The notes beneath the pieces were generated by a model that did no database searches, was not told the origin of the DNA, and saw nothing but the letters and a program-made list of their open reading frames with translations. Shown here piece after piece: positions 5,700 to 53,700 of a stretch of 64,000 nt of DNA (position 1 is the stretch's first letter; the number at the start of each line of letters is the position of its first letter). Source of the stretch: Macrostomum lignano (Eukaryota). The DNA lies in NCBI GenBank assembly GCA_002269645.1, contig NIVC01000065.1, positions 313,489 through 377,488 of the forward strand, read 5' to 3'. Both the position numbers and the translations under genes were made by a program.

Positions 5700-6911
<1,212 letters not shown>

Positions 6912-9134: not shown

Positions 9135-15854
<6,720 letters not shown>

Positions 15855-18405: not shown

Positions 18406-19094
18406 GGCATCAAATTTAGAAATCCTGCAAAATTCGCAGCTAACACGAAACTAATTGAAAAGACACGATATGAATCAGTAAAATTAAAGTAAGCAATTCG
18501 AAAAGGAAATAAGGATTGGGTACTAAAGGCAATCAGTTAGTTTGCAGAAGGCTATGAATTACAAATCAAGGCCGTTCCACCGACTCCTGAGCATGTACAC
18601 AGATACATACGCAGGCGCTGCACACTCGCACAGGGTGACTTTCTAACTATCAGGCATGTACAGTCTTTGTTCCCAGAGGGGTTGGCTTTCATGTAGTGAA
18701 CTAATTTTCCTCAGCAAAAAAATATTAATTACGAGCGTAATTAGACAGTTCACTGTTGCATATTTTTCAGTAGATGTTTAAGCAGAGGACCTCTCTCAGG
18801 CTCTGATGTAGAAGTCTCCAACAGTGGTGTTCAGAGTCTGCGGCACCAGAGCGAACTTCAGAAGGTGGCACAGCCGGGCCTGCTGCTGGAAAATCACAGC
18901 CTGACAGTTGCTACTGGCGGAGGAGTGGCACTTCAGAATGCAGTTGTCGGCCTCGGTGACGGGTTCAGTCCAGTGGGTGGTCTTCGAGTAGGAGCTGGTC
19001 ACCACCAGCTGAGGTCAGCTGGCCTCCAGCCGAAATATCTTGCAGCCGCTGCCTACAGGAGACAAAAAGGGCTTTGGAAGCTCCAATCAGTTGA

Positions 19095-21005: not shown

Positions 21006-21384
21006 CCAACTCTAGACACGTACCGTAGTGCATAGCGTAGACTGCATTCAGATCCAGACCGCCGCACACTTCAGCCGGATTTCCTCTGCAAGTTTGACCG
21101 GAACCGCTGCAATCCGCGTCGCTGACCTGACCGAGAGATCCGTAGGACCAGCCGCAAAAGCAGAAAGCGCTGGCTTGTACGCCGAAGTAGGGGAAGCCGC
21201 CCAGCGAGCAGGCGCTAGCGCACAGGCTCAGCGACATTGCGGAGTTGTCAAAGATGTACTGCGCTCCAGTGTTAGGGTCCACCTACTCAGGACGATGTTA
21301 GTTAATTGATTTAAGGACCAATTTTGTTTGAAAATGCATCATTGAAACAAAAGTAAGTAAGGACTTCTTAAATAGTCCTTGGGC

Positions 21385-30424: not shown

Positions 30425-34798
<4,374 letters not shown>

Positions 34799-36316
34799 TT
34801 ATAGCAATAGAGCGAGACTAAAGTTATTACTGTGCTGGCAACTGCTGCAGGTCTGCGTTTGAATGGTTTGGTCGCATTAACGTTTTTTGATTTTATTATT
34901 ATTTGTAGTAGTATTAGTAGCACTAGTAGTAGTTGTAGTAGTAGTAGTTGTAGTTGTAGTTAAATGGCTAGTCTATGATAAAGAAATATTCAATCAAAAA
35001 AGCTTGTTTAAAATTTCCTATAACATTCTAGAGAAAGCAAAAACTAACTTTTTAATCATAGAACTAAAAGTAATGTTGGTATTAAAAATTATTTTTTTGA
35101 AACTCTGGCATTCTTTTGTTAGATCTGATCCCTGAGCAGGTCAAGTTTGGTTTTACAATCCCATTAAAAAGAGTCAAAAAGGCACTCCACTACAAGTATA
35201 TCAAAATATAACATTTCACATTTGTTACATTTTACCAACTTTTCAAAGTCCCTTCAAATCATTACTGAAAGGCATTGAAATTTAGTATAGAAAGTTATGG
35301 AAGTGTAGCTTCCATAAATGGTGAAATATGTAGGTGATCATAAAATGAAACCAAAAAGAGTGTATAGGCTTTGAATTATAATCAAACTAATAGTAGAATT
35401 GTATTAGAGGGATTGTATCATAAAATTAAATGCCAGGTTGTGGATTGTATAGTAGTGTATGCCAGAATAAGAATCCTAGTAGCTCATCTAAATGTATGCC
35501 AGTGTAAGCCTAAAACAAAAAATCCTAAAATGTATGCCAAAAATTCATCCTAAAAAGGTCATTCAATTTTTACAAGAGTTTTTTAAGAAGTAAGCTTTTG
35601 TACAAAAAGTTTTTTTTAATATTACGAATATTTTCATTTTTAAAAAAACTTAAATTATACTAGGCCTAACAGAAATATTGATACAAAATTGATGCTCTTA
35701 GCAATAATTTATATTTATTTATTGTTACTTTAAAGAAGCAAAAAGTTTATCATGGACCTTCGAGACTATACAAATTTTCCTTTATTTTACAGTAAAAACA
35801 TTAATTTACATTACAATTTTCATGCATGGCATAAATTTATTCAGCAAATTTGTATGCCAAAAATATATATGTGGTTGTCTTACTTATATATGCCAATAGT
35901 ATATGCCAACAAAGTGTGCCAAGGGTTGTATATACCGGTTATATACACCAAGGACTTAGGGTTGACATTTTGTACACTGGAAAGGTTTTGGCATATATGT
36001 AAACTATCCACAACCTAGATTGAATGGAATATGGCCTAGTATGGTCTTAAAGTTGCAGTTTGATTGTGTTCATTTGGTGGAGACAGAGTCCCAGTCTATG
36101 TCAAATACTACACCTTTATCAATGATTTGCAGGGTTCAGAACAAACTTATTTATTATGGATGGTAAGCTTCTATACCTCCCTCACTTTTGTCTAACAATC
36201 CTATCCTAAATATAAAACATGAGGCTCATTCCATATAAGCATAGCCATAACATTACAGTTACAGGCTATTTTTACTTAAAAAATGAAATATAATAATAGA
36301 ATATACTAAAATAATT

Positions 36317-38432
36317 GGCAGTGCTTATCCCCACGGTACCGTAGGAATAATTTCTGTCTTATTCCAACGGTACCGTGCGAATAATTTTCTGCTTATCCGC
36401 ACGGCACACTGACGAGATAGCTGCCCTATCTTCTACATATGCCGTGCGAATAATTTTCTGCTTATCCGCACGGCACACTGACGAGATAGCTGCCCTATCT
36501 TCTACATATGCCGTGCGAATAATTTTCTGCTTATCCGCACGGCACACTGACGAGATAGCTGCCCTATCTTCTACATATGCCGTGCGAATAATTTTCTGCT
36601 TATCCGCACGGCACACTGACGAGATAGCTGCCCTATCTTCTACATATGCCGTGCGAATAATTTTCTGCTTATCCGCACGGCACACTGACGAGATAGCTGC
36701 CCTATCTTCTACATATGCCGTGCGAATAATTTTCTGCTTATCCGCACGGCACACTGACGAGATAGCTGCCCTATCTTCTACATATGCCGTGCGAATAATT
36801 TTCTGCTTATCCGCACGGCACACTGACGAGATAGCTGCCCTATCTTCTACATATGCCGTGCGAATAATTTTCTGCTTATCCGCACGGCACACTGACGAGA
36901 TAGCTGCCCTATCTTCTACATATGCCGTGCGAATAATTTTCTGCTTATCCGCACGGCACACTGAGGAGATAGCTGCCCTATCTTCTACATATGCCGTGCG
37001 AATAATTTTCTGCTTATCCGCACGGCACACTGAGGAGATAGCTGCCCTATCTTCTACATATGCCGTGCGAATAATTTTCTGCTTATCCGCACGGCACACT
37101 GACGAGATAGCTGCCCTATCTTCTACATATGCCGTGCGAATAATTTTCTGCTTATCCGCACGGCACACTGAGGAGATAGCTGCCCTATCTTCTACATATG
37201 CCGTGCGAATAATTTTCTGCTTATCCGCACGGCACACTGACGAGATAGCTGCCCTATCTTCTACATATGCCGTGCGAATAATTTTCTGCTTATCCGCACG
37301 GCACACTGACGAGATAGCTGCCCTATCTTCTACATATGCCGTGCGAATAATTTTCTGCTTATCCGCACGGCACACTGACGAGATAGCTGCCCTATCTTCT
37401 ACATATGCCGTGCGAATAATTTTCTGCTTATCCGCACGGCACACTGAGGAGATAGCTGCCCTATCTTCTACATATGCCGTGCGAATAATTTTCTGCTTAT
37501 CCGCACGGCACACTGACGAGATAGCTGCCCTATCTTCTACATATGCCGTGCGAATAATTTTCTGCTTATCCGCACGGCACACTGACGAGATAGCTGCCCT
37601 ATCTTCTACATATGCCGTGCGAATAATTTTCTGCTTATCCGCACGGCACACTGACGAGATAGCTGCCCTATCTTCTACATATGCCGTGCGAATAATTTTC
37701 TGCTTATCCGCACGGCACACTGACGAGATAGCTGCCCTATCTTCTACATATGCCGTGCGAATAATTTTCTGCTTATCCGCACGGCACACTGACGAGATAG
37801 CTGCCCTATCTTCTACATATGCCGTGCGAATAATTTTCTGCTTATCCGCACGGCACACTGAGGAGATAGCTGCCCTATCTTCTACATATGCCGTGCGAAT
37901 AATTTTCTGCTTATCCGCACGGCACACTGAGGAGATAGCTGCCCTATCTTCTACATATGCCGTGCGAATAATTTTCTGCTTATCCGCACGGCACACTGAC
38001 GAGATAGCTGCCCTATCTTCTACATATGCCGTGCGAATAATTTTCTGCTTATCCGCACGGCACACTGACGAGATAGCTGCCCTATCTTCTACATATGCCG
38101 TGCGAATAATTTTCTGCTTATCCGCACGGCACACTGAGGAGATAGCTGCCCTATCTTCTACATATGCCGTGCGAATAATTTTCTGCTTATCCGCACGGCA
38201 CACTGAGGAGATAGCTGCCCTATCTTCTACATATGCCGTGCGAATAATTTTCTGCTTATCCGCACGGCACACTGACGAGATAGCTGCCCTATCTTCTACA
38301 TATGCCGTGCGAATAATTTTCTGCTTATCCGCACGGCACACTGAGGAGATAGCTGCCCTATCTTCTACATATGCCGTGGGAATAATTTTCTGCTTATCCG
38401 CACGGCACACTGACGAGATAGCTGCCCTACAC
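36317..38432 (+). repeat. Left TIR: 55-bp terminal segment plus 30 x 69-bp units
   Basis: Unit CTGA(C/G)GAGATAGCTGCCCTATCTTCTACATATGCCGTGCGAATAATTTTCTGCTTATCCGCACGGCACA. Confidence 0.97.
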
Positions 38433-39544
38433 GTCCTCTGATTTATTCCCTCTGCTTTACTAGCTGCCCTATCTGCTACATATATATGCTGTGTGTGAAT
38501 AGTTTATAGCTTATTGAAAGGGAGTTTGAACTGAGGATACTAAGAAGCTGTTGATCTTGATGTATAAACTCGAATCAGTTCTAGACTGTATATGCATGTG
38601 TAAATGCGTGTTATTCTGCTTTACTGATACCCTTCTGTATACTTATTCAACAATGAGCGTATTCCTTCCAACTTAAAGATAGCTCAACTGTTCAAAAGTA
38701 GAAATAAAATGAAAATAGGATTCATCAAGTTACCTAAAGTGGTGATTTTCGGAAAGGAAAACGGATCGTTTTTCGTAAAAGCACGTGTACAAAATATATT
38801 TCATTCTAAAGTATAAAATTGATCATATTAACATATTTTTATTAGACACTTTGGTTGTGATAGCCATTGTATACTCAGTTTCTTGTGTACTCTCGTTCGA
38901 AATTAGGTTCTTTAGAGAAATCTCAAAACATTGTCCCGAACTTTAAGCGTCAATCTCTCACCCGAGGACAAAGCACTCATACCTAATGGTTCAAGGACAG
39001 TACAGAGGTATAACAGTAAACACACGTAAGGTATATCATAAAAGTAACAGAGAAGGTAGCAACTGTCCCGAGACTAAAACGTGATAGTACGAGCGCATAT
39101 TCTGCTTTTTTATAACTGATTCGTGCAGCACGTATTTTTATTTCTCAGTTGTGATTTTTAGCTCGTACTGACCTCTTTTCGCGAATTTTATGCTAACCTT
39201 TTTGCATTATTTCGGACAACATATTTTGAATTAGTTTTAAATAGAAATACAGTAATAAAAAGTATTAGCACCATGCTGGTGTGCGCAGTTAATAATAATA
39301 TGCTTCTACATAATGTTGAGATGTAGCAGATAGAATTTCTGCGGGCAAAGTCGAATGTGAAATATTACGAGTAGAAGAAAAAATTGAAAAGAAAGAAATG
39401 CAAATAAAACGTCTGACTTTTTGAGTACCAGCAGGCTTGCAGGATAAATTGAGCTAATTATGGTACAGCAAATTGAAAATAATAGTGGTACCGCAAATAT
39501 TTAAAATATACTACGTAATTTTTTGTCAAACAGCAGCAGCTGCT

Positions 39545-40893
39545 CGGGTGGAACAAAAGTATTGTCGTTTAAGCTATAACTCTGCTAAAAATAGCTATTA
39601 TTCCATAATTTTTCACTTCAATAAAAACGGGACACAAACTGGCTGCTAAAAAACTGGCTTGCTACGAGAAAAACACACGAGTCAGGCTAAAAACCATTGA
39701 GTGTCTATAGGCCACGGCATGCAACGAGCCTAGGAAAACGTAGTTGAAGCATGGAGCCTGACAAGACGCATTTTCAATCTTACGCGGCTACTCGCCTAAA
39801 ACTCGGTGACTGCTACCGAAGTTCACCAAGATCTGGTAGCTGCTTTGGGCGGTACTGTTCATCCTTAAGAACCATACAGCGCTGGATGAAAGACGTTAAT
39901 GACGGGACGCGGGAAGTGCTTGGCGATGGTGAACGACCTGGCAGGCCAAGGAGCTCAAGGACAGGAGATCTGGCGATGAAGGTGAAGGAGATGATCTGTG
40001 AGGATCCCCAGCTCTCGTCTCGTGATCTAGCTGAGCAGCTGAGTAGTGACCACAGCACAATACTTCGCATCCTTCGAGAGGACTTGCAGCTGCAAGGTGG
40101 ATTTGCTCTGTGTGGGTACCCCTCAACTTCACGGATGAGCAGAGACAGATGCGAGTCAACTGTGCCACACAATTGCGACGGGTTCTGCTAGTGCTAGGGA
40201 TGAAGGAGAAAAGGTAAAATCTGTACGCTGTGCAAGACGTGATATGGGTGTCCTGGGATGCTCATGGAACCAAGACTGCCAACAGGACTTGGCTTGAGAA
40301 GGGAGAGGCCCGGAAGCAGGTCGTGCGACCGAATGCTATGAAGAAGCGGAAGTCCCTGCTGATGGTCATGTTCACAGCCAACGAGCGATTCTCAGTGACT
40401 GCATTGCCTCAGGGAGAGTCGGTGGATGCCGAGCAGATGGTGAGCTACCTTTGGCGAACCGGAAACCAGTGGCTTACTCTCTGCGCTCCAACCCAGTCCG
40501 ACTGAGCGAGATCAGCTTGCAAATGAACAATGCTCGACCGCATGTTGCACGACTCTTTCGGGATTTCCTGCAAGAGCGCTCTGTCACTGTTTTGGCAGAG
40601 CTTTAAAGTCCCGATCTGAACCTGTGTGACCGGTGTCTGTTCCTCTGGCTGAAGAACGCACTCCGGGGCATGAACTTCAACAGCTGTCAAGAGGTTAAAG
40701 ACGCCTCGTTGCAGGTGTTGCAGAGCATCTCCGAAAGTCTTCGAGACCAGGTGGGTCTGCTCCTGGACCACTGCCAGCGCGTGATTGCAGCCAATGGACT
40801 ATGAACACTACTTTACTGATTAGAGTTAAAATGTTTCATGTTTTTACCTGTTTGCTTGTCTAGAGGTACTGACGACGACTTTTGTTCCACCTG
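39545..40893 (+). mobile_element. Degenerate mariner (Tc1/mariner) element nested in the MULE; transposase pseudogene from about 39751
   Basis: TIR C(A/G)GGTGGAACAAAAGT at 39545 and 40893 with TA on the right; fragments RTIQRW, GRP, WVPLNF, NNARPH (catalytic D replaced by N), SPDLNLCD; several frameshifts. Confidence 0.85.
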
Positions 40894-41239
40894 TAGTACA
40901 TAGAAGCGTGTTGAAACTAAAGACGAAAAATAGCATTTTTGAAAGATTTACAAGATTTGTACGCATAGCAGATTTGCGTTCAGAAAAATAATGCACCATT
41001 TATGATTCTGCTAAGTACTAGCTAAAACGTACGAGTAAAACGAAAAACTTTAAACTATCGACTACTTAGGTTTTGAAAAACTCCTAAATTTTCAATTTTA
41101 CCTACATGTTCACAATATGTCGACATAGACTACCTTTATCAACTTAGACCATGTCACCTGACTGACTCGTCATAAAATTTGGTTTACATTGTATGTTTCA
41201 ATAAAGAAATTGAAGACAGCTGTCGATAAGCAGTTAGCC

Positions 41240-44200
41240 TTAGCCATTGGCTGAGCAGAAAACACACGACCATATCTTGTGTTTCGACGCTGCATGGGTC
41301 TCAGGGCGGCCAATACACTTGGTGTGGAACCACTTCTTACAGTGACTGCACTCGACCTGTTAAAAGTGAAAGCGAAATTACAGGATTAAAGGCTCGTTCA
41401 CACTGCCATCAAATAACCATTTGCCCATCAGACATTTACTTAATGTCTGATTGATGATGGCAGTGTGAACAAGCCTATGCATAAAAAACTGTACATACTT
41501 TTAGGCAAAAAATGAATCCTTAACCCGCATAATTATTAAATATAGGCTATAACACAACTATTACATAATGATTCACATCATTGCATACCCAATTTTCTAG
41601 GTTAGAAATTGAAAGCGGCGACGACGTCTCGCCACACTTAAAGCACAAGTCATATGCATTATCTGCGTTGTCCAGCAGCCGGCGCCAGATTTTTTGCCTC
41701 TCAGAGGGCATAGCTGCTGGCGATGGATCAAATTTGATTTGTTGATCTGATCGCGATTCTAGCGATTTTAGAAATGCAGCTGCGAATTTGCAAATAAATA
41801 TGCCACAGCTTCTAGCATCTCGCTGGTTAGGATGCTGCAAAGTAAGCGGTTGCAAAACCGGCCAGAGCAAATAGCTGTGCAGCAAGCTGGAATAGAAACA
41901 TTGATATACGAAGTGCAGCTTGAATTCTACGAATCGACGTATGAAATACAAAATAAATATTTACATACAATAAAATCACACCAGTGCGATTCAAACAACT
42001 TTTGTTAATCTTGAAAAGTCAGCACAGTTTTTAGTTTAAACGCTAGTAATCAGAAAGCTACTAAAGATACTAATATATAAAGTTATCATACTTTACAGTC
42101 TCACACGTGCTTGCAGTGACCTTGTCCTCTTGCCCTAGTAATGGGTCCAAGATTGTAACGCTTCGCCTGCCAAGGTCGATTATCAAGAGCGAAAAGTGCT
42201 CGTTCTGTAGCTTAGGACCCAACAGTACGGAAGTTGAATTGGATGCCTTTGTGAGATTTAAACAAACGAGGCTTTATTATTATATGTGCTAATACTCGTG
42301 ACAGTAAGATTTAACAGTCGGAGCCATTTTGCCGCCGGCTTATATACGAAGGGGAATTTTCAATTGCCCATTAATATTATTGGTGCGCCGGAACGGAGTC
42401 ATGCCACGCAGCCACACTACCAGTGCCTATCCAAAGATTTTTTGCTACTTTTACTAGCCTAAGTGTAATTTCCAGGCTTGATAATCGAGATTGGAGAAAT
42501 TCGCAATCAGGTATAGACAATTAGCTGGTGCGTAAGCTTGTGTTGCGCCGCCGAGGTGCAGAAAAAACTGTCAGGGGGCGGGGGGAATATCCCACGTTGG
42601 TAGTTGGACTGTCGAATCTGCTGCTGCTGGACTGTTGGACTGTAGATCGCAAACGTTCACCATACGTACAAAAAGCAGCTAGGTGGTGATACTTAAACGA
42701 AATGTAAGTGTACATGTACAATACGATACCGACAAAAATATAAGATGAACTTACTGTCCTCAATTTTTTTAATAAGCCTTCAGTCAGCTTCAATTGGTCT
42801 CCGCTGAGGATTATGTCAACCTCATAATTGAAGAGGATCACGATAGGATTACGGCGCGTATTGCAACCCATAGCCAGAACGGCAATAAAAGCATGCACTA
42901 TCTGAAATGTTTATTATTGATTTACCGGACTAAACTTTCAGACGGTAGTTTTGGATACGCTTCTGAACAATCTTGGCTTTTCATGTTATGAGACTCTACC
43001 GCGGTACGTATTAATTATTACAAAAATTTCAAGAGAAAATTGTTCAGCAATTTTTGTAGTGGAATATATGTACAAGATAACAGGTTAAAATAACGCCGCA
43101 TAGCTCGACGCCGACGTCTTCGAGTCAAGCGGTTGGAATAGTTCGTTTTGGGGAAGCCTGGCGGTAATCGGAGGAAAACTGACACACGGGAGTCCCATGA
43201 CCGCTGCGGGCAAATCTGGACATACAAAGCTCGGCAGGTAGCAGGTAGGTAAAGTTCGGTGGGAAACGATCTCGCGGGAAAGTCACGTGTTCCCTTATTC
43301 CCAAATAGGGAATGTAAGTAATGAGCAAAAAGCCAAAAGCAACAAGAACTAACTTTTTTATTTTTATCAAGCTTAATCAAGAAGCATTTGAAATGAATAT
43401 ACTCACCGTTACAGACAAGGATGCATTCTGATCTAGAAGCGAATCGCGGTCCCAGCGACGAATAGCGAATTTCCCGAACTTTCCTGCATTACAGTCGAAG
43501 CAGGGCACTAGGTCAGATTGTTTTACATCATCCGATTGACTGCATTGACGAATCTTTTTTGGAAGGATCTCGGACTTCTTTTTCGCTGAAAAGCGCTTTG
43601 ATGCTTTAGGTCGACCGCGGCATACTGCACGGGGTGGCAGAACGCAATGCTGTAAGGCCAACTTGTAATTATCGCTTGTCATCGGATTGGCCTGTGTGCA
43701 AATACTCGTTTGACTTGTAGGGACCGTCGGAAAATTTAAAGAGCACAACTTGGTTTGGTCAGGAATGATGCTCGCAGCGTTGGCCGGAGGATCCGTACAC
43801 AACTTGGTTTCGTCAGAGACGATGCTCGCAGCGTTGGCCGGAGGATCCGTACACAACTTGGTTTCGTCAGAGACGATGCTCGCAGCGTTGGCCGGAGGAT
43901 CCGTACACGACTTGGTTTGGCCGGAGGCATTGCTAACAGCGGTGGCTGCGGTGTAGGACGTTTCTTGTTCAATGGCACTGTCGCATGCTTCACCTAGCAT
44001 TTCTAAAAATATACTGTCTGTCATACACCGGTCTGACGCACACTGCACAGTATTATCGCTTTCCAGAATGACGTGCTTTCGCGCTGCCCAATAGTTTTCG
44101 AGATTGGCAAGCAGTTGCAGTCTTTCTTTAAACTCAGCTCCCGACGATTCAGCTGCTAGCGATGCTAGTCTTTGAGCGATCTAAAAGACGCAGTGATTTT

Positions 44201-47200
44201 TTTAAATCAAGTAAATCGCCTTCAATGCGCTTAATTTTCATATTGTTGATTCGATCTAAGTTTAGGACTAAAATTTTACTGCGGTCTATTCTTTTGTCAC
44301 TTACCCGGAATGCAGTGCAGTATTTCTCTCGCTCAGACAATGGTGCGCTTCGTCGAGATGTGATTGGTGTAATAGAAGAGATTAGGCTTTCATTCCCGTC
44401 TCCAGAAGCACGGAGGGCTCGATGCGACTGCATATAATAGCTTACAGTCCAACGCTCGCAGCATAACCCTGGGTCAAACAGTGGAAGATTGCACGCACTG
44501 CGGAAATTAAAAATGTGCCGACATGGAAGATTAAAATGACGAAAAAATCGACAGGTGCAGTCAGTGGCTGAAGTTGAAGCGGACAGAGTTGAGACGTCAG
44601 TCTGGCTCTGCAATTCGTGCAGGACTTTGTCGGTGACAAATGGAGTTAGAAGACGAGAATATCGACCTTCAACAGAATCTTCGCTGAAAGGCCGGACGGC
44701 ACTTTTAGACAGCATAATTGTCGCTCGATAATCGCGCTCTGCGCAAAGAGAAGCCAGGGCGCTTAACAAATGGTCAAGAAAATCAAGGAACTTCGCATTC
44801 AGAGGTACAACAGCTTTGAGTTTCTGATTTAACGACTCGACTCGGTTATTCGTATTATTGTTGAAGGCACCGCATTTCAGTCCTACGACCCATTCAGATC
44901 GAATTTCATGCCAATTCTTACGGTAGTACTCTAAAAGCCTTGAACTTGCAATGTTCGCAAAACGGTTATAGATTTCAGTGTACGACTCCTCGCTCACTGC
45001 GTGCATTAAGAGCTTTAGCAGGCTGAGAACGGCCTCCTTGTTGTTCTCGTTTCTTGTTTCTTTCTGAAAAGTCTTTACGACATGAAAGAGACAGATTTCT
45101 AAAGTAACGTTCATTTCGCTTTGGAAGACGTCTCGTTCCACACAATCCTTATCAGTTACAACAACTCGGGTTCGGACCCTCGATGGATTACCGTCTTTGA
45201 ATGATTTAACTAACGCCTCCAGAGTTGATTTGGTCTCGCACTTTACGATCCATACTGCAACAATTTCGCTTTCGCCATTTCCATCTTCAATGACAACAAG
45301 AAAAACGGGCATTCGTAAATTGTTGAGCTTGTATGTCGCATCGATAAAAAGAACTTCAGGAAACTGGTTAAACATTGACTTCATAGAGCCATTTTGAAAA
45401 GAAATGGCCTCGACGATTTGTTGTTCGCCGGAAGTAGAAGTAAAAATCCGGACATCGGCACCCGGTTGACTGGAAAGGAGGTTTATAACCTCCTCTACTT
45501 CGCTACTTTCACTCTGAGCTGATTGATTTGACCGCGACTGCAGATTGTGCAGATCCTGAAGAATAACTCGTTTGCCTTGTTTTATCAGATGAGCTTGAAT
45601 AAGCTTTTTGTTGCAGCCAAGCTTTATCATCTGCGTCACTGCCTCTTTTTCTTGTTCGTCCAGTCGTCGTTGTGGAGGCAAGTTGGCAAATACTTCCTAT
45701 GAAATAAAAATGTGGTTAAAATGTTATCCAATTTACTAGAGGCTACTGTATCAGATGCACTATACACATATATATGTATGCTCGTTTATGTGTGTCTATT
45801 CAGTGGCGTAGCCAGGAATTTCAATTGGGTTGGGGGGGGGGGCGGGTTGGCCTGGTTGGCCATGCCTTATGCCATTGCCACTTTTGGCGCCGCAGGCACT
45901 CATTTTGGCGCCGCAGGTACTCAATTGCCTTCTGGTTTTTGGTATCCGCCGCGCCCAATCCCACCCCCAGGCGATTGGGGCCCTAGACGCCCGGATTGCG
46001 CAGAAATGGTGGCTAATTGTGACATAGAGTTCAATGTTTTGCTAAATGACAAATTGTACCAGTGGAGTCAAAAATCAAATCCCCAACCACTAGGCTTCAA
46101 CACCTTAATTTGGTATTGTTTAAACTGTAAATCATAACATATAAATGAATCCTAACATTTCTACTCACTATAGGGTAAACAAAGAAAATTCTATCATCTA
46201 AGTAATTACAATACTTACCTTTAGAACTGGATGGTTGTGCTGTAGGTTGGCAGTACGAACAACTAGGAATTGGCCACAGCTGCTTGCAGACAATCGGATC
46301 CTCAAGGGGCATCCTTGGAGTCCTGTGCTACAGTAAATAATAGAACAATTTAGTATTCGAAAATTATATTTGTACATGTGTACATGGTAACTAAGAAAAA
46401 TTCCCTAGATGCTAGGGTTTAATTATTACCAAAAAGCATTGAAATTGCTTTTATATATTGATATAGTGCCTAAAGTAATAGTTTATTTTATATGCTCAAT
46501 ATGCTCAAAATTATATATATTTATTTAAATGTTGTGATCTGTGAAATATTCTTGTGAATTATTATTTTGTTTAAAATTGCAACCAATCTATAGTATTAAT
46601 AGACGCACTTTGCAGGCTTTAAAGAGACAACCATTTTTTTGCCACCTCTTGGTTTAATAAACAAACTTAGTTCATTCTACTAATATTGAAATCGTTACTT
46701 GCAGTATTCTAAAGATTTAGTTATTTGCTAAGATTGAAATCATCATATAAAGAGTAGCAAAAAGCCTGCTAGAAAGTGAGAATCACCTCAAAGAGAGCAT
46801 AAATCGCCTCACAGCAATAACCTCAGAGAGTATAAGTCGCCTCAGGGCAGGAGAACCGCTTCATAGTGAGAGAAGATCGCCTCAGGGCAGAGAGAAGTAT
46901 AGAGATATGACCCTCTAGTCCCGGGAATGCCCAGGACTGAGAGATAGAAGAGCAGACAGTGCCAATTAAGACTGGTCAGGCTACAAGTACAGTACATGTA
47001 CAAATGCTATCAGTAAAAGTAGATAAGTAGGTAGATATGCTACCAAAAATAATAGTACATTTAGGCAAAAGTACAATAGGTAAAGTGATATAAGTTAAAC
47101 ATTAAAACAACTTTGGAGACAGCTTAAAGAATAATTAAATAGATTAAGAGCAGATAGCCTCTCACTATTGAACTTTAGGGACATAAAATACTTCTCATTT

Positions 47201-48845
47201 TCCAATTTTTCTGAAACTTTTCTGATTGGTAATAGTTAGCCACCCCACTCCTATTAGACCCCCTTAGGTTTAGAATTTATCTATCCAATCTTCAATAGAC
47301 TCCCATGCCTCTATTGAAGTTTAGGTATGTAAAATAAATCCTTATGAAAATTCTCTCTATCCTAAAGCCCCTATTCCCCATACCCTGGTTGTTAGTAGTT
47401 CTTAGCCCCCATGCACCCTACTTCCACCTTGTCACCAAATAGTTGCCTCTCCCCTTAGCCTTTGAATTTATCTAACTAATCCTCAATAGATCTCCATGCC
47501 TTTACTAAATTTTAGGTATATAAAATCATTCCCCATGAGATTCTTCCTATCCTAAAACCCTCTATTCCCCATGCCCAAATGGTTGGCCTTAAGGGTATAG
47601 GACCAAGACTGCCATACTTAAGAGCTAGGAGAGGAATTTGGCTCAATAAGTTATTGAATAGTGCTAGAGAAAAGAGTGGGTAGCACAATAAGCCTGCAAA
47701 AGAGGAACCTATGACTAGGTCTATGACTGTCTTGTTACAGTAAAACAAAGTTATTAATTTGAAAACATTAAATTATATGAAAAGTACATTAAACTCAAAA
47801 AAGAATTATACATTTTATTTTTAAAGTTAAGATTAATTTAAACTTAAACTTTGATTTAAATATAAGTGGCCTAAAAAATCAAGTGCCAAAAACTTGCACA
47901 GTTTATGGTAAAAAAAAACTTGCATAAAAATTGTACAAAATGTCTTGTTCTAAAATTGTCATATAAAGATTCCATCCTAGTTAATAATAGGTTGCCTAGC
48001 CAAGTCAAGTTCTATTATTACTAATGTGACCCTATAAAATAAGTATACTTATGTATAATCTAGGCTACAATTAGGGCCATATACCAAGATGGCTACAGTT
48101 TATTTAAATATCTAAATAGATAACATAATGTCTATTTCTTTATTATATCTAATCACAATTGGTCTTAAAGGTATAGATCTTCAAGTCTTTTAGAGATATA
48201 ATGTGTGTATAAATAGAATTAGATTAGGGGCTAAACCTATCAATATAAAGTAAAAAAGATTTCAGTTTTTATATTAAATATCAATAATTAGTTTCAAATC
48301 TAATTTTTTTACTAGATTAGTATCATGAATATTATGATTAATTAAATATAATATAACAAGTTAATCTGCTATAAGTTGCTAAATAATGGTAAAAAGAATA
48401 GATATATTGTGGCCATCTTGGTCTTACACTACTACTAGTGCTAAAAGATTAAAAATAGACAAAACTACAAAAAATAGCTATGCCTTAGAACTTTATTAGC
48501 TGAAGTTAATTTATTTATTTTTTGCAATAACAAGACAATAAAATGAATTTTATCAATTTGAAACTATATTTACCTTTGATTGGGCCTTGAACCTTTTGAT
48601 TCTGAAACATGTGTGCCACTATTGAAACACACATACACAACTTCATAGTACTTCAGTGCAGCTTTGAGTTGAGTTTTCGGAACTCTGCACTGAGCACTAG
48701 CAATAGTGCGTGATTCTCTAATTTTTAATTGTACGAAACACGACTTTCCAAAGTCACAAATAGCACTATTTAGAGCTTCAAAGGACTCAAACTGGCGACC
48801 AACAAAGAAAAAGTCTGAAGCAGTGGCATTGACATTGCCAGACAT
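41240..48845 (-). CDS. MULE transposase fused to Ulp1-like C48 protease and PHD finger, about 1087 aa; exons 48845-48574, 46327-46219, 45696-44305, 44180-43407, 42901-42755, 42246-42092, 41886-41589, 41356-41240
   Basis: Exon lengths sum to 3264 nt with compatible phases. Motifs: C...C...HNH (WRKY/GCM1-like), FIDATY, VVTDKD, CLFH, NNRVES (DDE), CTC...PCRH (SWIM), RGRPK, EHFSLLIID...ILDP, NQRDARSCG (His-Asp-Gln-Cys), CFKC...CSHC...WFHTKC...CVFC (PHD). Confidence 0.85.
43750..43925 (-). repeat. 54-bp coding tandem repeat (KLCTDPPANAASIVSDET x3) in MULE exon 4
   Basis: Visible in the ORF 43377..44048 translation. Confidence 0.88.
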
Positions 48846-49392
48846 TTAAACTTGGCTATTCTCAATTATCAAAAATAATAAATCGTTGTTTATTCCTTTG
48901 AATAAAATTTAGCCTAATTTTTCTAAATTTTTTATTTTTTGCAATAGAAAAACTTAATATAGCTACACTAGACTACGCTTTAGTTAGGCTTAGCAATTGC
49001 AAGAATTCTAATGTGTAGCAGTGGCACGAGCAAATAGCGAATATAAGTCAATAAAGTGAATAAAGTGAATAAAGAGAATAAAGCGAATAAAGCAAATTGT
49101 TAAAGCAATGCAATAATCGATACAAACAAAATTGCGAATTCACATGAGTAGTAAAATTCTACGGAAGCGGAAATGGACTATATAAATCACGGCGAGATCA
49201 GATTAGACTTTGCTAAAAATTTAAATAATGAACAATTCTTAGAGTTAATTTAATTTTAATCATTTGTTACTACACAAAAAATTCTTTCTTATAGAAAAGT
49301 CGTTAAATCTTTATTTCTTCAGAACAAATGTTCAAGCTAAGTTATGTTGTTATACTGCACTCAAATCGTATGTACTAAACTTCCCACACGGC

Positions 49393-49861
49393 TTATGTAG
49401 AAGATAGGGCAGCTATCTCGTCAGTGTGCCGTGCGGATAAGCAGAAAATTATTCGCACGGCATATGTAGAAGATAGGGCAGCTATCTCCTCAGTGTGCCG
49501 TGCGGATAAGCAGAAAATTATTCGCACGGCATATGTAGAAGATAGGGCAGCTATCTCGTCAGTGTGCCGTGCGGATAAGCAGAAAATTATTCGCACGGCA
49601 TATGTAGAAGATAGGGCAGCTATCTCGTCAGTGTGCCGTGCGGATAAGCAGAAAATTATTCGCACGGCATATGTAGAAGATAGGGCAGCTATCTCCTCAG
49701 TGTGCCGTGCGGATAAGCAGAAAATTATTCGCACGGCATATGTAGAAGATAGGGCAGCTATCTCGTCAGTGTGCCGTGCGGATAAGCAGAAAATTATTCG
49801 CACGGTACCGTTGGAATAAGACAGAAATTATTCCTACGGTACCGTGGGGATAAGCACTGCC
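49393..49861 (-). repeat. Right TIR: 6 x 69-bp units plus 55-bp terminal segment, inverted
   Basis: Reverse complement of the left TIR. Confidence 0.97.
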
Positions 49862-50738
49862 AAAATAATTATACATATAGTAAAAGACTAGGCCTATTTT
49901 GTCAAGAATATGTTTATATACTTTCATATAGATATTATCAATAGTAAAGATGCTATTAAACCTTGAATGGCACTTATTGTCATAACAAAAAGATTCTTGA
50001 CATATAGAAACTAAAAGGTAAAAGACTTATAAGTGTTACAGATATTTAGTAATAGTAGGCCTTAAAACTTTTGACAAGCTGAATGACCAGTGTTTTAGTA
50101 TGTTTGGACAGCTAGGCCAAACGTAGCTGCTTAAAACCATATTTTCGTAGAAAAACAGTAGTAGTAGTAAGTTTGGCTCAGGCAAGAAGCCTGTTGCATG
50201 TTTGGCCAATTTATTTCTGTGTATTTAAGATCACTTCAGGAACAGAAGGCAATATTTTAACATTAGGCCCTAGTTATTTAACTACGATTGTACGAGTTTT
50301 GCAATATGGTTATTTGAAAGAACGCGTAAATGTTGTTAACGAAACCTTGGACGACTAACGAAGTGAAAGAAAAAGCAAGGAGTTAAAAAAGAATTGCGTG
50401 AATTGTGAAATATATTTTTTTATGATTTGATTTTCTTGAAAAACTGCGAGTATCACCATTCGTACACGTGATAATAAATTGAAGCATAAAAGTACTAAAT
50501 ATTATTTAGTAACCAGTTAAATAAGTAAATTTTATTTATTTTGTATTTTTTCTTTTTTTAGTACATAAGACTTGTTATAGTAATTTAACACTTTCAAACT
50601 TTGTTTTTATGTGATTTAAGATAATGACTTTTAAGCACGCAGTCTAGGACATTCAATAGGAACATAGTAAGTATTTTTCCTTCGCAAGTTAGGTTCTTTT
50701 ATTAATTAACGTAATATTGCATTTCTGTTGTTCTAATC

Positions 50739-53700
50739 ATGGTAGAAGCAAAAGCGGAAAATATTAAGGTTGTTTGCCGTATTCGTCCACTTTTAAGCAA
50801 TGAATTGGCACTCCAAAGTCAGTTTTGCTTATCACTTGTCAATGAAACATCAATCAGCATTCAGGTATGTCTTTAATTTAAAAAATGAAATATGTTGTAA
50901 CCTTGGGCTATGCGTGTTTTGAGGATACTATGATTTACTTTATCTATAGTGTAAAATTGTGTTATTGTTGGTGTTATATAAAAATACATATTTGGCCCAT
51001 TTGTTTGATTTCAAGTCCTACTTTTGTCCCATAGTCCGGATCATGCTGGGTGCACGCCTGAACAAAAATTGAATAATTACAAATGCACACCGAAAAAAAT
51101 TTAGTGCATGCCCATTCTCAAAAATATGCTGGTGTTGCAACAATAAATGACATTTTTTACGTTGTGACAATAAAAGACCTTTTTTAAATTGCGTAATAGA
51201 CCTTTAATATTGGATAATTTTGTTGCTTTTAAAGCTTTTTTGGCGATACTATTAATAGCAGAAAGTTTATACATGCAAAGATTTGTTTAAATATTTTTTA
51301 TGAGCTGGAAAAACCTGGAAAGCTTGAAATTTGTGCTTGAAAATGAACTTTTTTCATCTTTTTTCTACTTTACAATAACTTTTACTCGTGATTCTATAAA
51401 GTGCATGCCAGGTGTGCACGCATACTATTTTCTCAGGAGTGATGCACGCCAACTGTGCACGCCTAATTTTGGCGTGCAAGGCCAATGCACGCCTGAATTT
51501 TTGGGCATATACTACATGATCCGGAGTGTGGCTTTTGTCAAGCCTCCAACACATAACTAAAATGCTATTTACATATAAATATAGAATAAACTACTCTATT
51601 AAGCCCCCATGGGGGCATTAAAATTCAAAACATTGATAGCATAAAAAACTTTTTTTGAATATTTAACCAACTTCCAAATCCAAATCTATTTTTCATTGTT
51701 TAAAATTTTATATATACTTAGCAACATTGAAAAATTGCTACTTTATACGCCATTGAGCAATTTTATCTTGGACTAGGGCCTATTCTAAAATAAAAGATAC
51801 AAGAAAACTAATTAGATGGCTTTAATCTATTCAATAAAACCCTAGCACATTGTAGGCCCCACTTTATTCCTCAACTTAGGCCTGCCACGGTGTAGCAATT
51901 TGTGTCACTTCCAAAGATAGAAAGACTTTACTTGCACTCTTAAAAGTGGCAACCATAGATAGAATCTTCTATGATGGCAACTTTTCAATATTACTAAGTA
52001 TATAAGCATACTATAACATCAAGCCCCTGATAATAGGCATTCAAATAAAAAATTCAAGCAATGAAAATTTTGTTTTTAAAATATTTGACTCTATAACAAT
52101 TAGTGTAATTTTTTTGACCCATTGACAATTGGTATAAATTTTATATACCAATTTGCCAAATAATTCTAAATTTATTGGGCCCATTTGTTATTATCCCCAT
52201 TTGAAATTACACCACCTAGTGTTGTATTCATAAAACAAGACAATCAAGATCAGAGCAGTTTAGGGGCTTGATAAATTTCAGGCTATCTTTTTAACTCGCT
52301 CTCTCCTATGCACCCATTCTTTTATCAATTGTCTATATTAGACTGGTTGGTAAACAATAATAAAATTTAAACAATCCTACAAATTGTGAGCCTGCTATGT
52401 AAAGCGTCATAAAATGTCTCCTTAACTTTATTGTACATTCTACATGATAAATTGTCCAAGGTTAGACCTAAATGGTTAAACTGAGCAAATAAATTAAGAA
52501 ATAGAGCACCATTGATAGCATAAAAAATCTTTTTCAAATATTTGACACACTTCTCATTGGAATTTTTCATCAAAAAGTTATGCATGATCCTTGAAAAATA
52601 AGTAAGTTTTTAAAATTTGAAAAAAATGGCTAGATGGTTCTCAAAAAAATCAACAATAGATGGGCAGACAGATAGACAAGCAAATGGTGCAACATTTATA
52701 TATAGATTTGCTTTCTGGTGTTAATTTTCTTTATACAAAGCTTGTTTGATAGAAGTGTATTTGCTATAAGTATTCTTCTATTAATATCAAACAAGCTATT
52801 GAAGCCTATAAATTTTAAACTTGTATGATTCCAATCCCTAGAACTTTTTGCTTATATTCTAATATCTGAAGTCATTTAAAAAACTTTTTGATGGTTAAGA
52901 TAAGGATAAACATAAAATGAAATAAATTCATATAACTAAGATTTGAGGCAAGCATTGATCTCATTGATAGAATGAGGCAATGTCTGTTTAAAATGTGTAT
53001 TGGCAAACTCTGTTCTCTGCCTCTGTTTCTCTTTGTATCCTTTGGATCCTTTGAAACTTCTATCTTCTCTTTTGCTTTCTCTTCTCTCTTGTCTTTTCCT
53101 TCTCTATTCTTATCTTTTCTTCCCACTCTTGTCTCCACTTTTCTGTTTCTTCTCTTCTATCTCATTCTGTTCTCTCATTTCTCATTTCTCCTTTTATCTC
53201 TGCTCTCATCTCTATCATCTCTTCTATTCTCTCATCTTTCCTCTCTCTTTTATAAACCATGTTTACAAGCCTTGATTTTGCTAATTGCCATATACTGTTA
53301 AACTGCTGCAGAGTCGCCTATACAGAGGACAATGGTTACTATTTAAAACAAAACAATAATATGCAAAATATACAAAATATTTCTAATATTTGTACAGTTT
53401 AACAAAATGGCAAAGCTTTCAAAATATCCATTTCTAGGAAAAGTCACATATCTACCTAGATAGATAGATGGATACCAACAGACCATTTTTAGTATATGGA
53501 TATACCAAAAAATGAATCCTAATAGAAAAAAGTAATACAATCAGAATAAGACCTCTAGACTTAAAATCTTAGGAATTGCATTAGAAGACAGAACATCTAT
53601 CAAAGGGTAAAAACATCTAGACCAGGAGCTGACAACATTGCCTGAAAACTTTGCCTAAGAACCTGTTCTTCTATTATTCCAATAGAAGAAGTCAGAGAAC

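What the first reader, a model, noticed from the sequence alone, without database searches (positions are those of the whole stretch)
41240..48845. Apparently intact 8-exon transposase-Ulp1 protease-PHD fusion gene in an animal MULE
The ORF track shows only fragments. Joining eight GT-AG exons gives one uninterrupted frame of 3264 nt (about 1087 aa): WRKY/GCM1-type Zn finger, MULE DDE core (D in FIDATY, D in VVTDKD, CxxH, E in NNRVES), SWIM finger, AT-hook-like RGRPK, a Ulp1/C48 fold retaining His (EHF), Asp (ILDP), oxyanion Gln and Cys (NQRDARSCG), and a complete C4HC3 PHD finger. Ulp1-like domains are known in plant MULEs (Kaonashi) and Zisupton. A single spliced animal transposase carrying both a candidate deSUMOylase and a histone-reader domain suggests an element that reads chromatin and strips SUMO-dependent silencing. 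That function is inference. The exon 6 acceptor (AAG) is the weakest junction.
Basis: partly seen in the sequence, partly recalled or inferred. Interest (0 to 1): 0.9.

Follow-up and report, generated by a model that had tools for sequence, protein, structure and literature searches.

The report
Flatworm jumping gene with protease tail
A freshly inserted 13.5-kb Mutator-type jumping gene of the flatworm Macrostomum lignano encodes one spliced transposase that ends in a SUMO-protease-like domain and a histone-reader finger; the gene is real and intact on paper, but this design is already known in animal transposons.

Summary
Pfam finds ZSWIM3_N/FAR1-type finger, MULE DDE core, SWIM, Peptidase_C48 and PHD, all above curated cut-offs. 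An MSA-based AlphaFold model matches Ulp1/SENP structures, and His915, Asp932, Gln971, Cys977 and all eight PHD ligands are present. The gene sits in a 13,545-bp element (36317-49861) with a perfect 9-bp target duplication, near-identical inverted ends and subterminal 69-bp minisatellites, in Macrostomum lignano contig NIVC01000065.1.

There are two corrections. First, the weak point is the exon-6 donor, not the exon-6 acceptor. The RNA-derived GenBank model uses a donor 13 nt upstream, which shifts the frame and removes the Cys box and PHD. The in-frame donor is supported by intron positions identical to those of a 35-40%-identical paralogous module. Second, the architecture is not new. The Ulp1-PHD cassette has at least 234 database relatives, is the usual tail of Rehavkus transposases, and was reported in 2010 for hydra and lancelet Mutator and for Ginger1 transposases.

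The deSUMOylase and chromatin-reader function remains inference. Verdict: a new member of a known kind, of moderate interest.

The parts
36317..49861 (-). Whole element: a 13,545-bp MULE-superfamily DNA transposon. Its gene is on the minus strand.
   Evidence: The inverted termini begin with GGCAGTGCTTATCC at both tips. They are perfect for 165 nt, with 3 mismatches in 475 nt.
36308..36316 (.). Left copy of the 9-bp target-site duplication, AAAATAATT.
   Evidence: Direct reading of both flanks.
49862..49870 (.). Right copy of the 9-bp target-site duplication, AAAATAATT.
36317..36372 (.). Left terminal segment, made of about 34-bp degenerate units that contain the palindrome ACGGTACCGT.
36373..38429 (.). 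Left subterminal minisatellite: 69-bp unit, 29.8 copies, 99% matches. It is inverted relative to the right array.
49387..49805 (.). Right subterminal minisatellite: the same 69-bp unit, 6.1 copies.
49806..49861 (.). Right terminal segment, the mirror of 36317-36372.
48574..48845 (-). Exon 1 (ATG at 48845; aa 1-90.7). It encodes the first half of the WRKY/GCM1-type (ZSWIM3_N/FAR1) DNA-binding finger, including C73.
   Evidence: Donor AAG|gtaaat. The Pfam ZSWIM3_N hit, aa 15-123, runs straight across the exon 1/2 junction. Relatives align across the junction. This exon is not included in the 5'-partial GenBank model.
46219..46327 (-). Exon 2 (aa 91.7-127), the second half of the N-terminal finger (C97, H121, H123).
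   Evidence: The exon 2/3 junction is present in P0001.
44305..45696 (-). Exon 3 (aa 128-591). It encodes the RNase H-like MULE DDE core (D246, D309, C329xxH332, E414) and the SWIM finger (C507, C509, C519, H521).
   Evidence: Pfam. Residues. The junction CTAFR|IAQRL is present in both public models, so the unspliced stop at 44149 is bypassed.
43407..44180 (-). Exon 4 (aa 592-849). It encodes the transposase C-terminal helices, an 18-aa coding minisatellite (54-nt unit, 43744-43918), the AT-hook-like RGRPK, and the start of the Ulp1 module.
   Evidence: Similarity to the Rehavkus-type paralog P0184 starts at about aa 750-780.
42755..42901 (-). Exon 5 (aa 850-898), the N-terminal helices of the Ulp1 fold.
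   Evidence: The intron position is the same as in the paralog.
42092..42246 (-). Exon 6 (aa 899-949.7). It encodes Ulp1 catalytic His915 (42198-42196) and Asp932 (42147-42145).
   Evidence: The acceptor cacaaag|GCATCC is used by P0001 and P0002. The donor AAA|gtatga at 42092 splits an Asn codon as AA|C, exactly as in the paralog.
42093..42105 (-). The 13 nt that lie between the alternative upstream donor used in the public models (exon end 42105, CGT|gtgaga) and the conserved donor (exon end 42092).
   Evidence: Using 42105 with acceptor 41886 shifts the frame and ends at a stop at 41770-41768.
41589..41886 (-). Exon 7 (aa 950.7-1049). It encodes the oxyanion Gln971 (41825-41823), catalytic Cys977 (41807-41805) and the first half of the PHD (C1031, C1034, W1049).
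   Evidence: The acceptor ttctattccag|CTTGCT is the one used in the public models. Residues. Alignment to SENP1 and SENP2.
41240..41356 (-). Exon 8 (aa 1050-1087 plus TAA), the second half of the PHD (C1052, C1055, H1060, C1063, C1080, C1083).
39751..40800 (+). A degenerate mariner-like fragment inside the element. It is either a nested insertion or a passenger, and it is not part of the transposase gene.
   Evidence: HTH_32 at 1.4e-9. The downstream frames are broken.

Best explanation
This is an autonomous, very recently inserted MULE-superfamily (Mutator-like) cut-and-paste transposon of the flatworm Macrostomum lignano. It spans 36317-49861 (13.5 kb).

Its single 8-exon gene encodes a 1087-aa transposase with these parts, in order:
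- an N-terminal WRKY/GCM1-type zinc finger;
- a ZSWIM3-like MULE DDE core;
- a SWIM finger;
- a repetitive basic linker;
- a C-terminal cassette made of a Ulp1/SENP-type CE-clan cysteine protease followed by a PHD finger.

Shown here: the gene structure, the domains, the fold, the catalytic and zinc ligands, the termini and the target duplication. Also shown: the Ulp1-PHD cassette is a conserved unit, with conserved intron positions, that is shared with Rehavkus transposases.

Inferred mechanism:
- The transposase binds the repeated subterminal 69-bp units through its N-terminal finger.
- It excises and reinserts the element, making 9-bp duplications.
- The PHD finger tethers it to histone H3 tails, probably at K4-methylated or open chromatin.
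- The protease removes SUMO or a related ubiquitin-like modifier from nearby chromatin, silencing or repair factors, which favours transposition or expression.

Whether this copy makes the full-length protein depends on which of two exon-6 donors, 13 nt apart, is used.
For: - Gene model: reproduced at 3264 nt with GT-AG introns.
- Junctions 2/3, 3/4, 4/5 and 5/6 are present in two independent public models. One of these comes from the RNA-seq-guided assembly (PMC5730564).
- The window is 100% identical to NIVC01000065.1.
- Pfam domains are all above their cut-offs.
- The AlphaFold model built with an MSA has pLDDT 83 and pTM 0.79. Its top Foldseek hits are Ulp1/SENP structures: 6dg4 at 1.8e-8, then SENP5, SENP2, SENP1 and 1euv.
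- phmmer aligns His, Asp, Gln and Cys with those of SENP1 and SENP2.
- Among 92 relatives, His and Cys are invariant and Gln is present in 91 of 92. All eight PHD ligands are conserved.
- TSD, TIR and minisatellites.
- The cassette has 234 relatives at E<=1e-3.
- The same MULE+SWIM+C48+PHD order is found in Solemya velum KAL5013870.1, and MULE+C48+PHD in Frankliniella XP_026290701.1.
- All five junctions bounding the four cassette introns match, in position and phase, those of the M. lignano Rehavkus-type paralog.
- A profile built from the relatives scores our exons 5-8 at 172 bits.
Against: - The only deposited transcript-derived models (P0001, P0002) use donor 42105. They end out of frame at 41770-41768, without Gln971, Cys977 or the PHD. 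The two donors match the splice consensus equally (6 of 9 positions each, from direct reading).
- The first Trp of the Gly-Gly clamp is Ser845 here; it is Trp in 28 of 45 relatives. The second is Phe916; it is Phe in 26 of 92 and Trp in 64 of 92. These changes might weaken activity.
- The PHD and SWIM hits exceed their Pfam cut-offs only narrowly.
- Only one copy is visible, and there is no direct evidence of mobility or of protein.
- No AATAAA lies within 300 nt of the stop.
- A dead mariner-like fragment lies inside the element.
- The SUMO specificity and histone binding are inferred from fold and sequence only.
Confidence: 0.8

Rival explanations
1. In this family the protein actually made is a truncated transposase of about 960 aa. 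The stronger-looking upstream donor (42105) is used, the frame shifts after Asp932, and the Cys box and PHD are never translated. Under this reading the Ulp1-PHD tail of this copy is a relic, or is made only as a minor isoform.
For: Both public models, from two assemblies and two annotations, end ...VTASTSCCTAICS...LHF*. This corresponds to donor CGT|gtgaga plus acceptor 41886. The GenBank annotation derives from RNA-seq (StringTie/TACO/TransDecoder). The conserved donor has weakened here to GTATGA, whereas the paralog has GTAAGT.
Against: - The downstream frame is open for 137 codons and still scores as C48 and PHD.
- The in-frame donor lies exactly at the conserved intron position.
- The annotation kept only one CDS per set of alternative transcripts.
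- StringTie-type assemblers can pick one of two donors that lie 13 nt apart.
- The insertion is too young for decay to be informative.
Confidence: 0.25
2. The Ulp1-like domain is a non-catalytic, or only weakly catalytic, SUMO/ubiquitin-like-binding module. It would recruit the transposase to modified chromatin rather than cleave anything.
For: Ser replaces the first clamp Trp and Phe replaces the second. The Pfam match covers only profile positions 94-193 of 217.
Against: His, Asp, Gln and Cys are all retained. His and Cys are invariant across 92 relatives, which argues for selection on catalysis. Phe at the second clamp position is common in the family. The full fold is predicted.
Confidence: 0.12
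3. The protease acts in cis or in trans on the transposase itself, by self-processing as viral CE-clan proteases do. This would release the DDE enzyme from the PHD-protease tail.
For: CE-clan relatives include the adenovirus protease. Relatives P0079 and P0081 give weak Peptidase_C5 hits. A long disordered repetitive linker precedes the cassette.
Against: There is no Gly-Gly motif anywhere in the 1087-aa protein. The best structural matches are SUMO proteases, not viral processing enzymes.
Confidence: 0.05
4. This is a domesticated host gene (ZSWIM3-like) rather than a mobile element.
For: The closest named relatives are annotated 'zinc finger SWIM domain-containing protein 3-like'. Only a single copy is seen.
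Against: The gene lies between near-identical inverted termini, with a perfect 9-bp target duplication, in an intergenic site between a kinesin gene and a WD40 gene. The DDE triad is intact.
Confidence: 0.03

Closest known systems
Rehavkus group of MULE-related transposons (Repbase; Dupeyron et al. 2019, PMC6446971; Tribolium work, bioRxiv 10.1101/2024.12.02.626372)
   Same: - A 9-bp TSD, long inverted termini carrying subterminal tandem repeats, and a PHD finger at the transposase C-terminus.
- Shown here: Rehavkus-type transposases also carry the Ulp1 domain in front of that PHD. Examples are the T. castaneum Rehavkus-1_TC-like protein EEZ99552.1 and many others.
- A Rehavkus-type paralog in M. 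lignano shares our cassette at 35-40% identity, with identical intron positions.
   Different: The DDE core differs. A profile of the six reference Rehavkus cores does not detect our transposase (E 0.11), while it hits 20+ cassette-bearing proteins at 1e-9 to 1e-115. Our core is ZSWIM3-like MULE (FIDATYKL, against DATGS in Rehavkus).
Animal Mutator (MuDR) transposases with Ulp1 domains from hydra and lancelet, and Ginger1 transposases with Ulp1 or Ulp1+PHD (Bao, Kapitonov & Jurka 2010, PMC2836005)
   Same: A DDE transposase with a C-terminal Ulp1 domain, with or without a PHD, encoded by spliced genes in invertebrate DNA transposons. Figure 1e of that paper aligns the Ulp1 and PHD domains of Ginger1 and Mutator transposases.
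   Different: The host phylum differs (Platyhelminthes). Ginger1 has an integrase-type core, not a MULE core.
ZSWIM3-like MULE transposases of aphids, sea spiders, nemerteans and others (e.g. Aphis gossypii LOC126549742)
   Same: These are the closest transposase relatives, at 31-38% identity over aa ~10-690. They share the N-terminal finger, core and SWIM. Many end in a PHD that matches the PHD part of the cassette.
   Different: None of the 29 sampled has the Ulp1 domain between the transposase and the PHD.
Plant ULP-carrying MULEs (Kaonashi/KI-MULE, CUMULE; Hoen 2006 and van Leeuwen 2007, as cited in PMC2836005)
   Same: A MULE associated with a C48/Ulp1 domain.
   Different: These are plant elements. 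No PHD tail is described for them. As I recall, KI-MULEs lack a recognisable transposase. Not compared by sequence here.
Zisupton (Bohne et al. 2012; recalled from memory)
   Same: SWIM and Ulp1 domains in an animal DNA transposase.
   Different: Zisupton is a different transposase superfamily. Our core passes the Pfam MULE and ZSWIM1-3 RNaseH-like models. Not compared by sequence here.
Ulp1/SENP SUMO proteases (1euv, SENP1/2/5)
   Same: The same fold and the same catalytic His-Asp-Cys plus Gln.
   Different: Only 16-22% identity. The clamp Trp residues are replaced by Ser and Phe. The domain is fused to a transposase and a PHD.

Membership tests
MULE (Mutator-like) superfamily | RNase H-like DDE core with the MULE signature (D, D, CxxH, E) | tested here: met
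   PF10551 at 56.7 bits and PF21056 at 113.7 bits. D246, D309, C329/H332 and E414 are present.
MULE (Mutator-like) superfamily | 8-11 bp (typically 9 bp) target-site duplication flanking long TIRs | tested here: met
   A perfect AAAATAATT lies on both sides. The termini are identical for 165 nt.
MULE (Mutator-like) superfamily | N-terminal WRKY/GCM1-type finger and a SWIM finger downstream of the core | tested here: met
   ZSWIM3_N at 43.6 bits (FAR1 is below its cut-off at 18.4). SWIM at 21.0 bits against a cut-off of 19.6.
MULE (Mutator-like) superfamily | Transposition activity | not testable with these tools
   There is only indirect evidence of recency: the perfect TSD and TIRs.
Rehavkus | [quoted passage not shown] | tested here: met
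   The features are as listed in PMC6446971 Table 1.
Rehavkus | DDE core homologous to the reference Rehavkus transposases (DATGS... type) | tested here: not met
   A profile of the 6 reference cores scores our protein at E 0.11 and 5.5 bits. It scores true members at up to 378 bits.
Ulp1/SENP (peptidase C48, clan CE) | The Ulp1 catalytic-domain fold | tested here: met
   AF2 model with pLDDT 83. Foldseek top hits are 6dg4, SENP5, SENP2, SENP1 and 1euv, at E 1e-8 to 1e-7. The model was built on a variant that differs only in the exon 6/7 loop.
Ulp1/SENP (peptidase C48, clan CE) | Catalytic His-Asp-Cys and the oxyanion Gln | tested here: met
   H915, D932, Q971 and C977 align with those of SENP1 and SENP2 and with invariant family columns.
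Ulp1/SENP (peptidase C48, clan CE) | Two Trp residues clamping the Gly-Gly of the substrate (a feature recalled from the Ulp1/SENP structure papers) | tested here: inconclusive
   Here the residues are Ser845 and Phe916. Relatives have W at the first position in 28 of 45, and W in 64 and F in 26 of 92 at the second.
Ulp1/SENP (peptidase C48, clan CE) | Cleavage of SUMO (or NEDD8 or ubiquitin) conjugates | not testable with these tools
   This needs an enzyme assay.
PHD finger | C4HC3 zinc ligands with canonical spacing | tested here: met
   C1031, C1034, C1052, C1055, H1060, C1063, C1080 and C1083 are present. PF00628 scores 24.9 bits against a cut-off of 24. The best PDB sequence hits are the ALFIN-like, PHF2 and PHF8 PHDs.
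PHD finger | Binding of the histone H3 tail | not testable with these tools
   W1049 and W1058 occupy positions that are aromatic in K4me3 readers (recalled from memory). There is no assay.
Zisupton | A Zisupton-type transposase core | not tested
   No Zisupton sequence was on hand. The core already passes the MULE models.
Domesticated ZSWIM1/3 host genes | Loss of termini and TSD, with fixed syntenic single-copy orthologs | tested here: not met
   The termini and TSD are intact.

The most novel reading that the evidence does not exclude
The Ulp1-PHD unit is a transferable cassette that moves between unrelated transposase lineages. In Macrostomum, a ZSWIM3-like MULE whose relatives carry only a PHD tail would have taken the whole intron-containing cassette, and perhaps the minisatellite-type termini, from a resident Rehavkus element. 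In this element, two exon-6 donors 13 nt apart would then act as a switch between a full-length transposase and a truncated one that lacks protease activity and the PHD, in analogy with splicing control of the P element.
Probability: 0.2. Interest if true: 0.65.

Novelty: new member of a known kind. Interest (0 to 1): 0.4.

Why it matters
Transposases from several superfamilies (MULE, Rehavkus, Ginger1) repeatedly carry the same protease-plus-histone-reader tail. Its role has been discussed since 2006-2010, but I found no experimental test of it.

This locus offers an apparently intact and very young copy in Macrostomum lignano, an animal with established transgenesis. The copy has defined termini, so it could serve two purposes:
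- as a test bed for whether a transposon uses chromatin-targeted removal of SUMO-like modifiers to escape silencing or to manage repair;
- possibly as the basis of a native transposon tool for this species.

Two practical points also follow. The public gene model for this locus is truncated. The literature describes the 'PHD finger' of Rehavkus, but that finger is really part of a larger Ulp1-PHD cassette.

Tried and rejected
- Exon-6 acceptor.
- Exon 6/7 pairing. My interim model E (donor 42097, acceptor 41918; 1096 aa) scored slightly best against the family profile (175.9 against 171.8 bits) and matched SENP2 spacing. I dropped it for 42092|41886 for two reasons. That pair reproduces the paralog's intron position and phase exactly (Asn codon split AA|C), and it uses the RNA-supported acceptor. 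The variant 42107|41886 is also open but shorter, and it scored lower (165 bits).
- Single-sequence AlphaFold gave pLDDT 37 and was useless. The MSA version was used instead.
- The word-index homology search with the 279-aa tail returned nothing, although P0002 shares 155 residues with it. I treat this as a failure of the tool's sensitivity, not as absence. The exhaustive HMMER search found 234 relatives.
- Filing the element as Rehavkus was rejected on the DDE core.
- No second copy of the internal region exists in the window.
- No AATAAA or ATTAAA lies within 300 nt downstream of the stop, and there is no GG motif for self-cleavage.
- Literature searches for Ulp1+PHD+MULE, for Peptidase_C48+transposase, and for M. 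lignano Mutator found no description of this element.

Full report
**Where the window comes from.** The spliced protein retrieves two Macrostomum lignano entries at 98-100% identity. The locus fetched for one of them (GenBank NIVC01000065.1, assembly Mlig_3_7) is 100% identical to window 56326-31768. The finding therefore lies in the genome of a free-living flatworm. It sits between a kinesin gene and a WD40-repeat gene.

**The observation.** Exons 1-5 and 8 have clean GT-AG borders: the donors are GTAAAT, GTAAGT, GTAAGT, GTGAGT and GTAAGT, and the acceptors are pyrimidine-rich. For exons 6 and 7, open frames alone do not decide, because 683 GT-AG combinations stay open.

The final model is 48845-48574, 46327-46219, 45696-44305, 44180-43407, 42901-42755, 42246-42092, 41886-41589 and 41356-41240. 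Pfam on this protein gives the following:
- ZSWIM3_N, aa 15-123.
- ZSWIM1-3_RNaseH-like, aa 200-321, E 7e-33.
- MULE, aa 242-335.
- SWIM, aa 505-522.
- Peptidase_C48, aa 913-1000, 33.9 bits.
- PHD, aa 1031-1083, 24.9 bits.

All of these are above the curated cut-offs.

**Which junctions have outside support.** GenBank protein PAA-type entry 'BOX15_Mlig017792g2, partial' (P0001) annotates this very locus, window 46326-41768. UniProt A0A1I8GU03 (P0002) comes from the earlier assembly.

The GenBank annotation was derived from a genome-guided RNA-seq assembly (StringTie, TACO, TransDecoder; PMC5730564). These joins are therefore transcript-supported. The unspliced stop at 44149 is bypassed, and the transposase is joined to the first half of the Ulp1 domain in one mRNA. 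P0001 has one 18-aa repeat fewer than the genome. This suggests that reads from a second allele or copy contributed to it (an inference).

**The real weak point.** Both public models leave exon 6 at CGT|gtgaga (exon end 42105) and enter exon 7 at ttctattccag|CTTGCT (41886). That shifts the frame and gives ...VTASTSCCTAICS...LHF, with a stop at 41770-41768. Such a protein has His915 and Asp932 but no Gln971, no Cys977 and no PHD.

The in-frame alternative uses the same acceptor and a donor 13 nt downstream, AAA|gtatga (exon end 42092). By direct comparison with MAG|GTRAGT, each donor matches 6 of 9 positions.

The decisive argument for 42092 comes from a paralog. M. lignano protein PAA72330.1 (P0184, locus L002 in NIVC01001098.1) carries a 35-40%-identical cassette behind a Rehavkus-type core. 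All five junctions that bound its four cassette introns sit at the same codon and phase as ours. They include a donor TTAAA|gtaagt that splits an Asn codon as AA|C, exactly like GTAAA|gtatga here.

Whether this copy's mRNA mostly follows it is open.

**The tail is a true Ulp1 fold plus PHD.**
- Single-sequence structure prediction failed, with pLDDT 37.
- With an alignment of 42 relatives, the model reached pLDDT 83 and pTM 0.79.
- Its best PDB matches are Ulp1/SENP catalytic domains: 6dg4 at E 1.8e-8, then SENP5, SENP2, SENP1 and yeast Ulp1 1euv. NEDP1 and bacterial CE-clan enzymes rank lower.
- phmmer aligns 'HFSLLIID...ILDPL...HPNQRDARSCG' with 'HWSLVVID...YLDSM...IPQQLNGSDCG' of SENP2.
- In 92 relatives, the His and Cys are invariant, Gln is present in 91, Asp in 76 (Asn in 14), and the eight PHD ligands are nearly invariant.
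- There are two deviations. The position of the first Gly-Gly-clamp Trp is Ser845 (Trp in 28 of 45 relatives that cover it). The second is Phe916 (Phe in 26, Trp in 64 of 92).
- The best PDB sequence hits for the PHD are the ALFIN-like, PHF2, PHF8, KDM5 and Pygopus fingers, which are readers of methylated H3K4. That points to a K4-methyl reader, but it is not a test.
- The predicted structure was made on my interim splice variant. That variant differs only by a 9-residue longer loop at the exon 6/7 join, which is also the lowest-confidence part of the model.

**The element around the gene.** Inverted 69-bp minisatellite arrays lie at 36373-38429 (29.8 units) and 49387-49805 (6.1 units). Each is capped outwards by about 56 nt of 34-bp degenerate units. 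The tips read GGCAGTGCTTATCC... on both ends. They are identical for 165 nt and have 3 mismatches in 475 nt. Both are flanked by AAAATAATT (36308-36316 and 49862-49870).

The element is thus 36317-49861, or 13,545 bp, with a perfect 9-bp target duplication. That is the hallmark of MULEs and a sign of a recent insertion. Downstream of the gene, inside the element, lies a decayed mariner-like fragment at about 39751-40800 on the plus strand. No other copy of the internal region is in the window.

**What family it is.** The termini, the 9-bp duplication and the PHD are exactly the listed traits of Rehavkus (PMC6446971 Table 1; Tribolium data). I took the six reference Rehavkus DDE cores from that paper's supplementary alignment and built a profile from them.
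- The profile hits 20+ of the proteins that carry our cassette, at up to 378 bits. They include T. castaneum LOC103312407 (essentially Rehavkus-3_TC) and EEZ99552.1 (Rehavkus-1_TC-like, with C48 and PHD by Pfam).
- It does not detect our transposase, at E 0.11.
- A profile-profile comparison places the Rehavkus-type cores only distantly next to MULE cores (hhalign probability 78%, E 2e-5, with D, D and CxxH aligned).
- Our core belongs instead with 'ZSWIM3-like' MULE transposases of a nemertean (38% identity), aphids, sea spiders, a sponge and molluscs.
- Many of those end in a PHD that matches the PHD part of the cassette, but none of the 29 sampled has the Ulp1 part.

The element is therefore a ZSWIM3-like MULE with a Rehavkus-style tail and Rehavkus-style ends.

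**How common the cassette is.**
- An exhaustive HMMER search of 1.84 billion representatives with the 279-aa tail found 234 proteins at E<=1e-3. Many align from the Ulp1 N-terminus to the last PHD cysteine.
- Of 36 longer ones, 24 pass Peptidase_C48 and 15 pass PHD at E<=1e-3.
- 22 share the Rehavkus-type N-terminus.
- Solemya velum KAL5013870.1 (1095 aa) has MULE + SWIM + C48 + PHD, and Frankliniella occidentalis XP_026290701.1 has MULE + C48 + PHD. Both match our protein collinearly in core and tail.
- By score (159 bits against at most 79 bits) and in a rough neighbour-joining tree without support values, our cassette is sister to the M. lignano Rehavkus cassette. It sits among Rehavkus-linked cassettes rather than with the bivalve and thrips MULE cassettes.

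Together with the shared introns, this is compatible with exchange of the cassette between two transposon families within the flatworm lineage. Common descent with loss of Ulp1 in other ZSWIM3-like lineages is not excluded.

**Comparison with the literature.** Bao, Kapitonov and Jurka (2010, PMC2836005) state that Ulp1 domains are encoded by Mutator transposons of hydra and lancelet as well as plants. They list Ginger1-9_HM as 'Ulp1, PHD'. [quoted passage not shown] They proposed a role in transposition or in repair signalling.

The papers on Rehavkus that I could search mention only the PHD and never Ulp1. I found no description of this element, or of MULEs, in M. lignano. The architecture is therefore known. 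This is a new host phylum and a new combination of core and tail, and nobody appears to have tested the cassette's function.

**Mechanism, with its status.**
- Shown: an intact DDE triad, DNA-binding and SWIM fingers, repeated subterminal units, the 9-bp duplication, a complete protease active site and a complete PHD.
- Inferred from what is established for MULEs and foldback-type ends: the transposase binds the repeated units and performs cut-and-paste.
- Inferred from fold and motif only: the PHD docks on H3 tails, and the protease removes SUMO or a related modifier from neighbouring proteins. This would help the element escape SUMO-dependent heterochromatin formation or would tune repair after excision.
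- Rivals are listed separately: a truncated main product, a non-catalytic binding module, self-processing, and a domesticated gene.

**Verdict.** The functional reading is plausible but untested. One junction is contradicted by the deposited transcript model. The design has precedents. I rate it a new member of a known kind, interest 0.4.

Noticed in passing
window 10138-14246 (+ strand): ORFs of a Gypsy-like LTR retrotransposon. They comprise a DUF7041 gag-like ORF; protease, RT, RNase H and integrase zinc finger in one 745-aa ORF (11067-13304); and the integrase core (13341-14246).
   Followed up: partly
window 39751-40800 (+ strand), inside the MULE: A decayed mariner-like fragment. It has an HTH_32 domain and remnants of the DDE region in broken frames. 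It is either a nested insertion or a passenger.
   Followed up: partly
window 43744-43918 (exon 4): A coding 54-nt minisatellite of 3.2 units, encoding an 18-aa repeat (TDPPANAASIVSDETKLC). The GenBank protein for this locus has one unit fewer, which suggests allelic or copy-number polymorphism.
   Followed up: partly
locus L002 (NIVC01001098.1), about 5012-12137: A second M. lignano transposon family. It has a Rehavkus-type DDE core, a long coding decapeptide minisatellite (MAESxQPKRR, about 25 units), and the Ulp1-PHD cassette with the same introns. It belongs to the multi-copy 'Mlig000140/Mlig023417' gene clusters. In both families a coding minisatellite lies just upstream of the cassette.
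   Followed up: partly
window 5701-6911, 14613-15678, 32944-33957, 19091-21008, 57244-58002 and others: The window is unusually dense in long micro- and minisatellites: (TCTG)x303, (TATC)x266, (TCTA)x253, a 29-mer x64 and an 18-mer x42. This is consistent with the repeat-rich M. lignano genome.
   Followed up: no
window 47260-47385 and 47451-47576 (intron 1): A 128-nt direct repeat at 81% identity inside the 2.2-kb first intron.
   Followed up: no
window 50739-56732 (+ strand) and 31768-34798 (- strand): The flanking host genes are a kinesin motor protein and a WD40-repeat protein. The element is inserted between them.
   Followed up: no
36 of the longer proteins (list): Pfam misses the C48 domain in 12 of 36 cassette-bearing proteins, including the Rehavkus-3_TC-like T. 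castaneum protein. This may be why the Rehavkus literature mentions only a PHD finger.
   Followed up: partly
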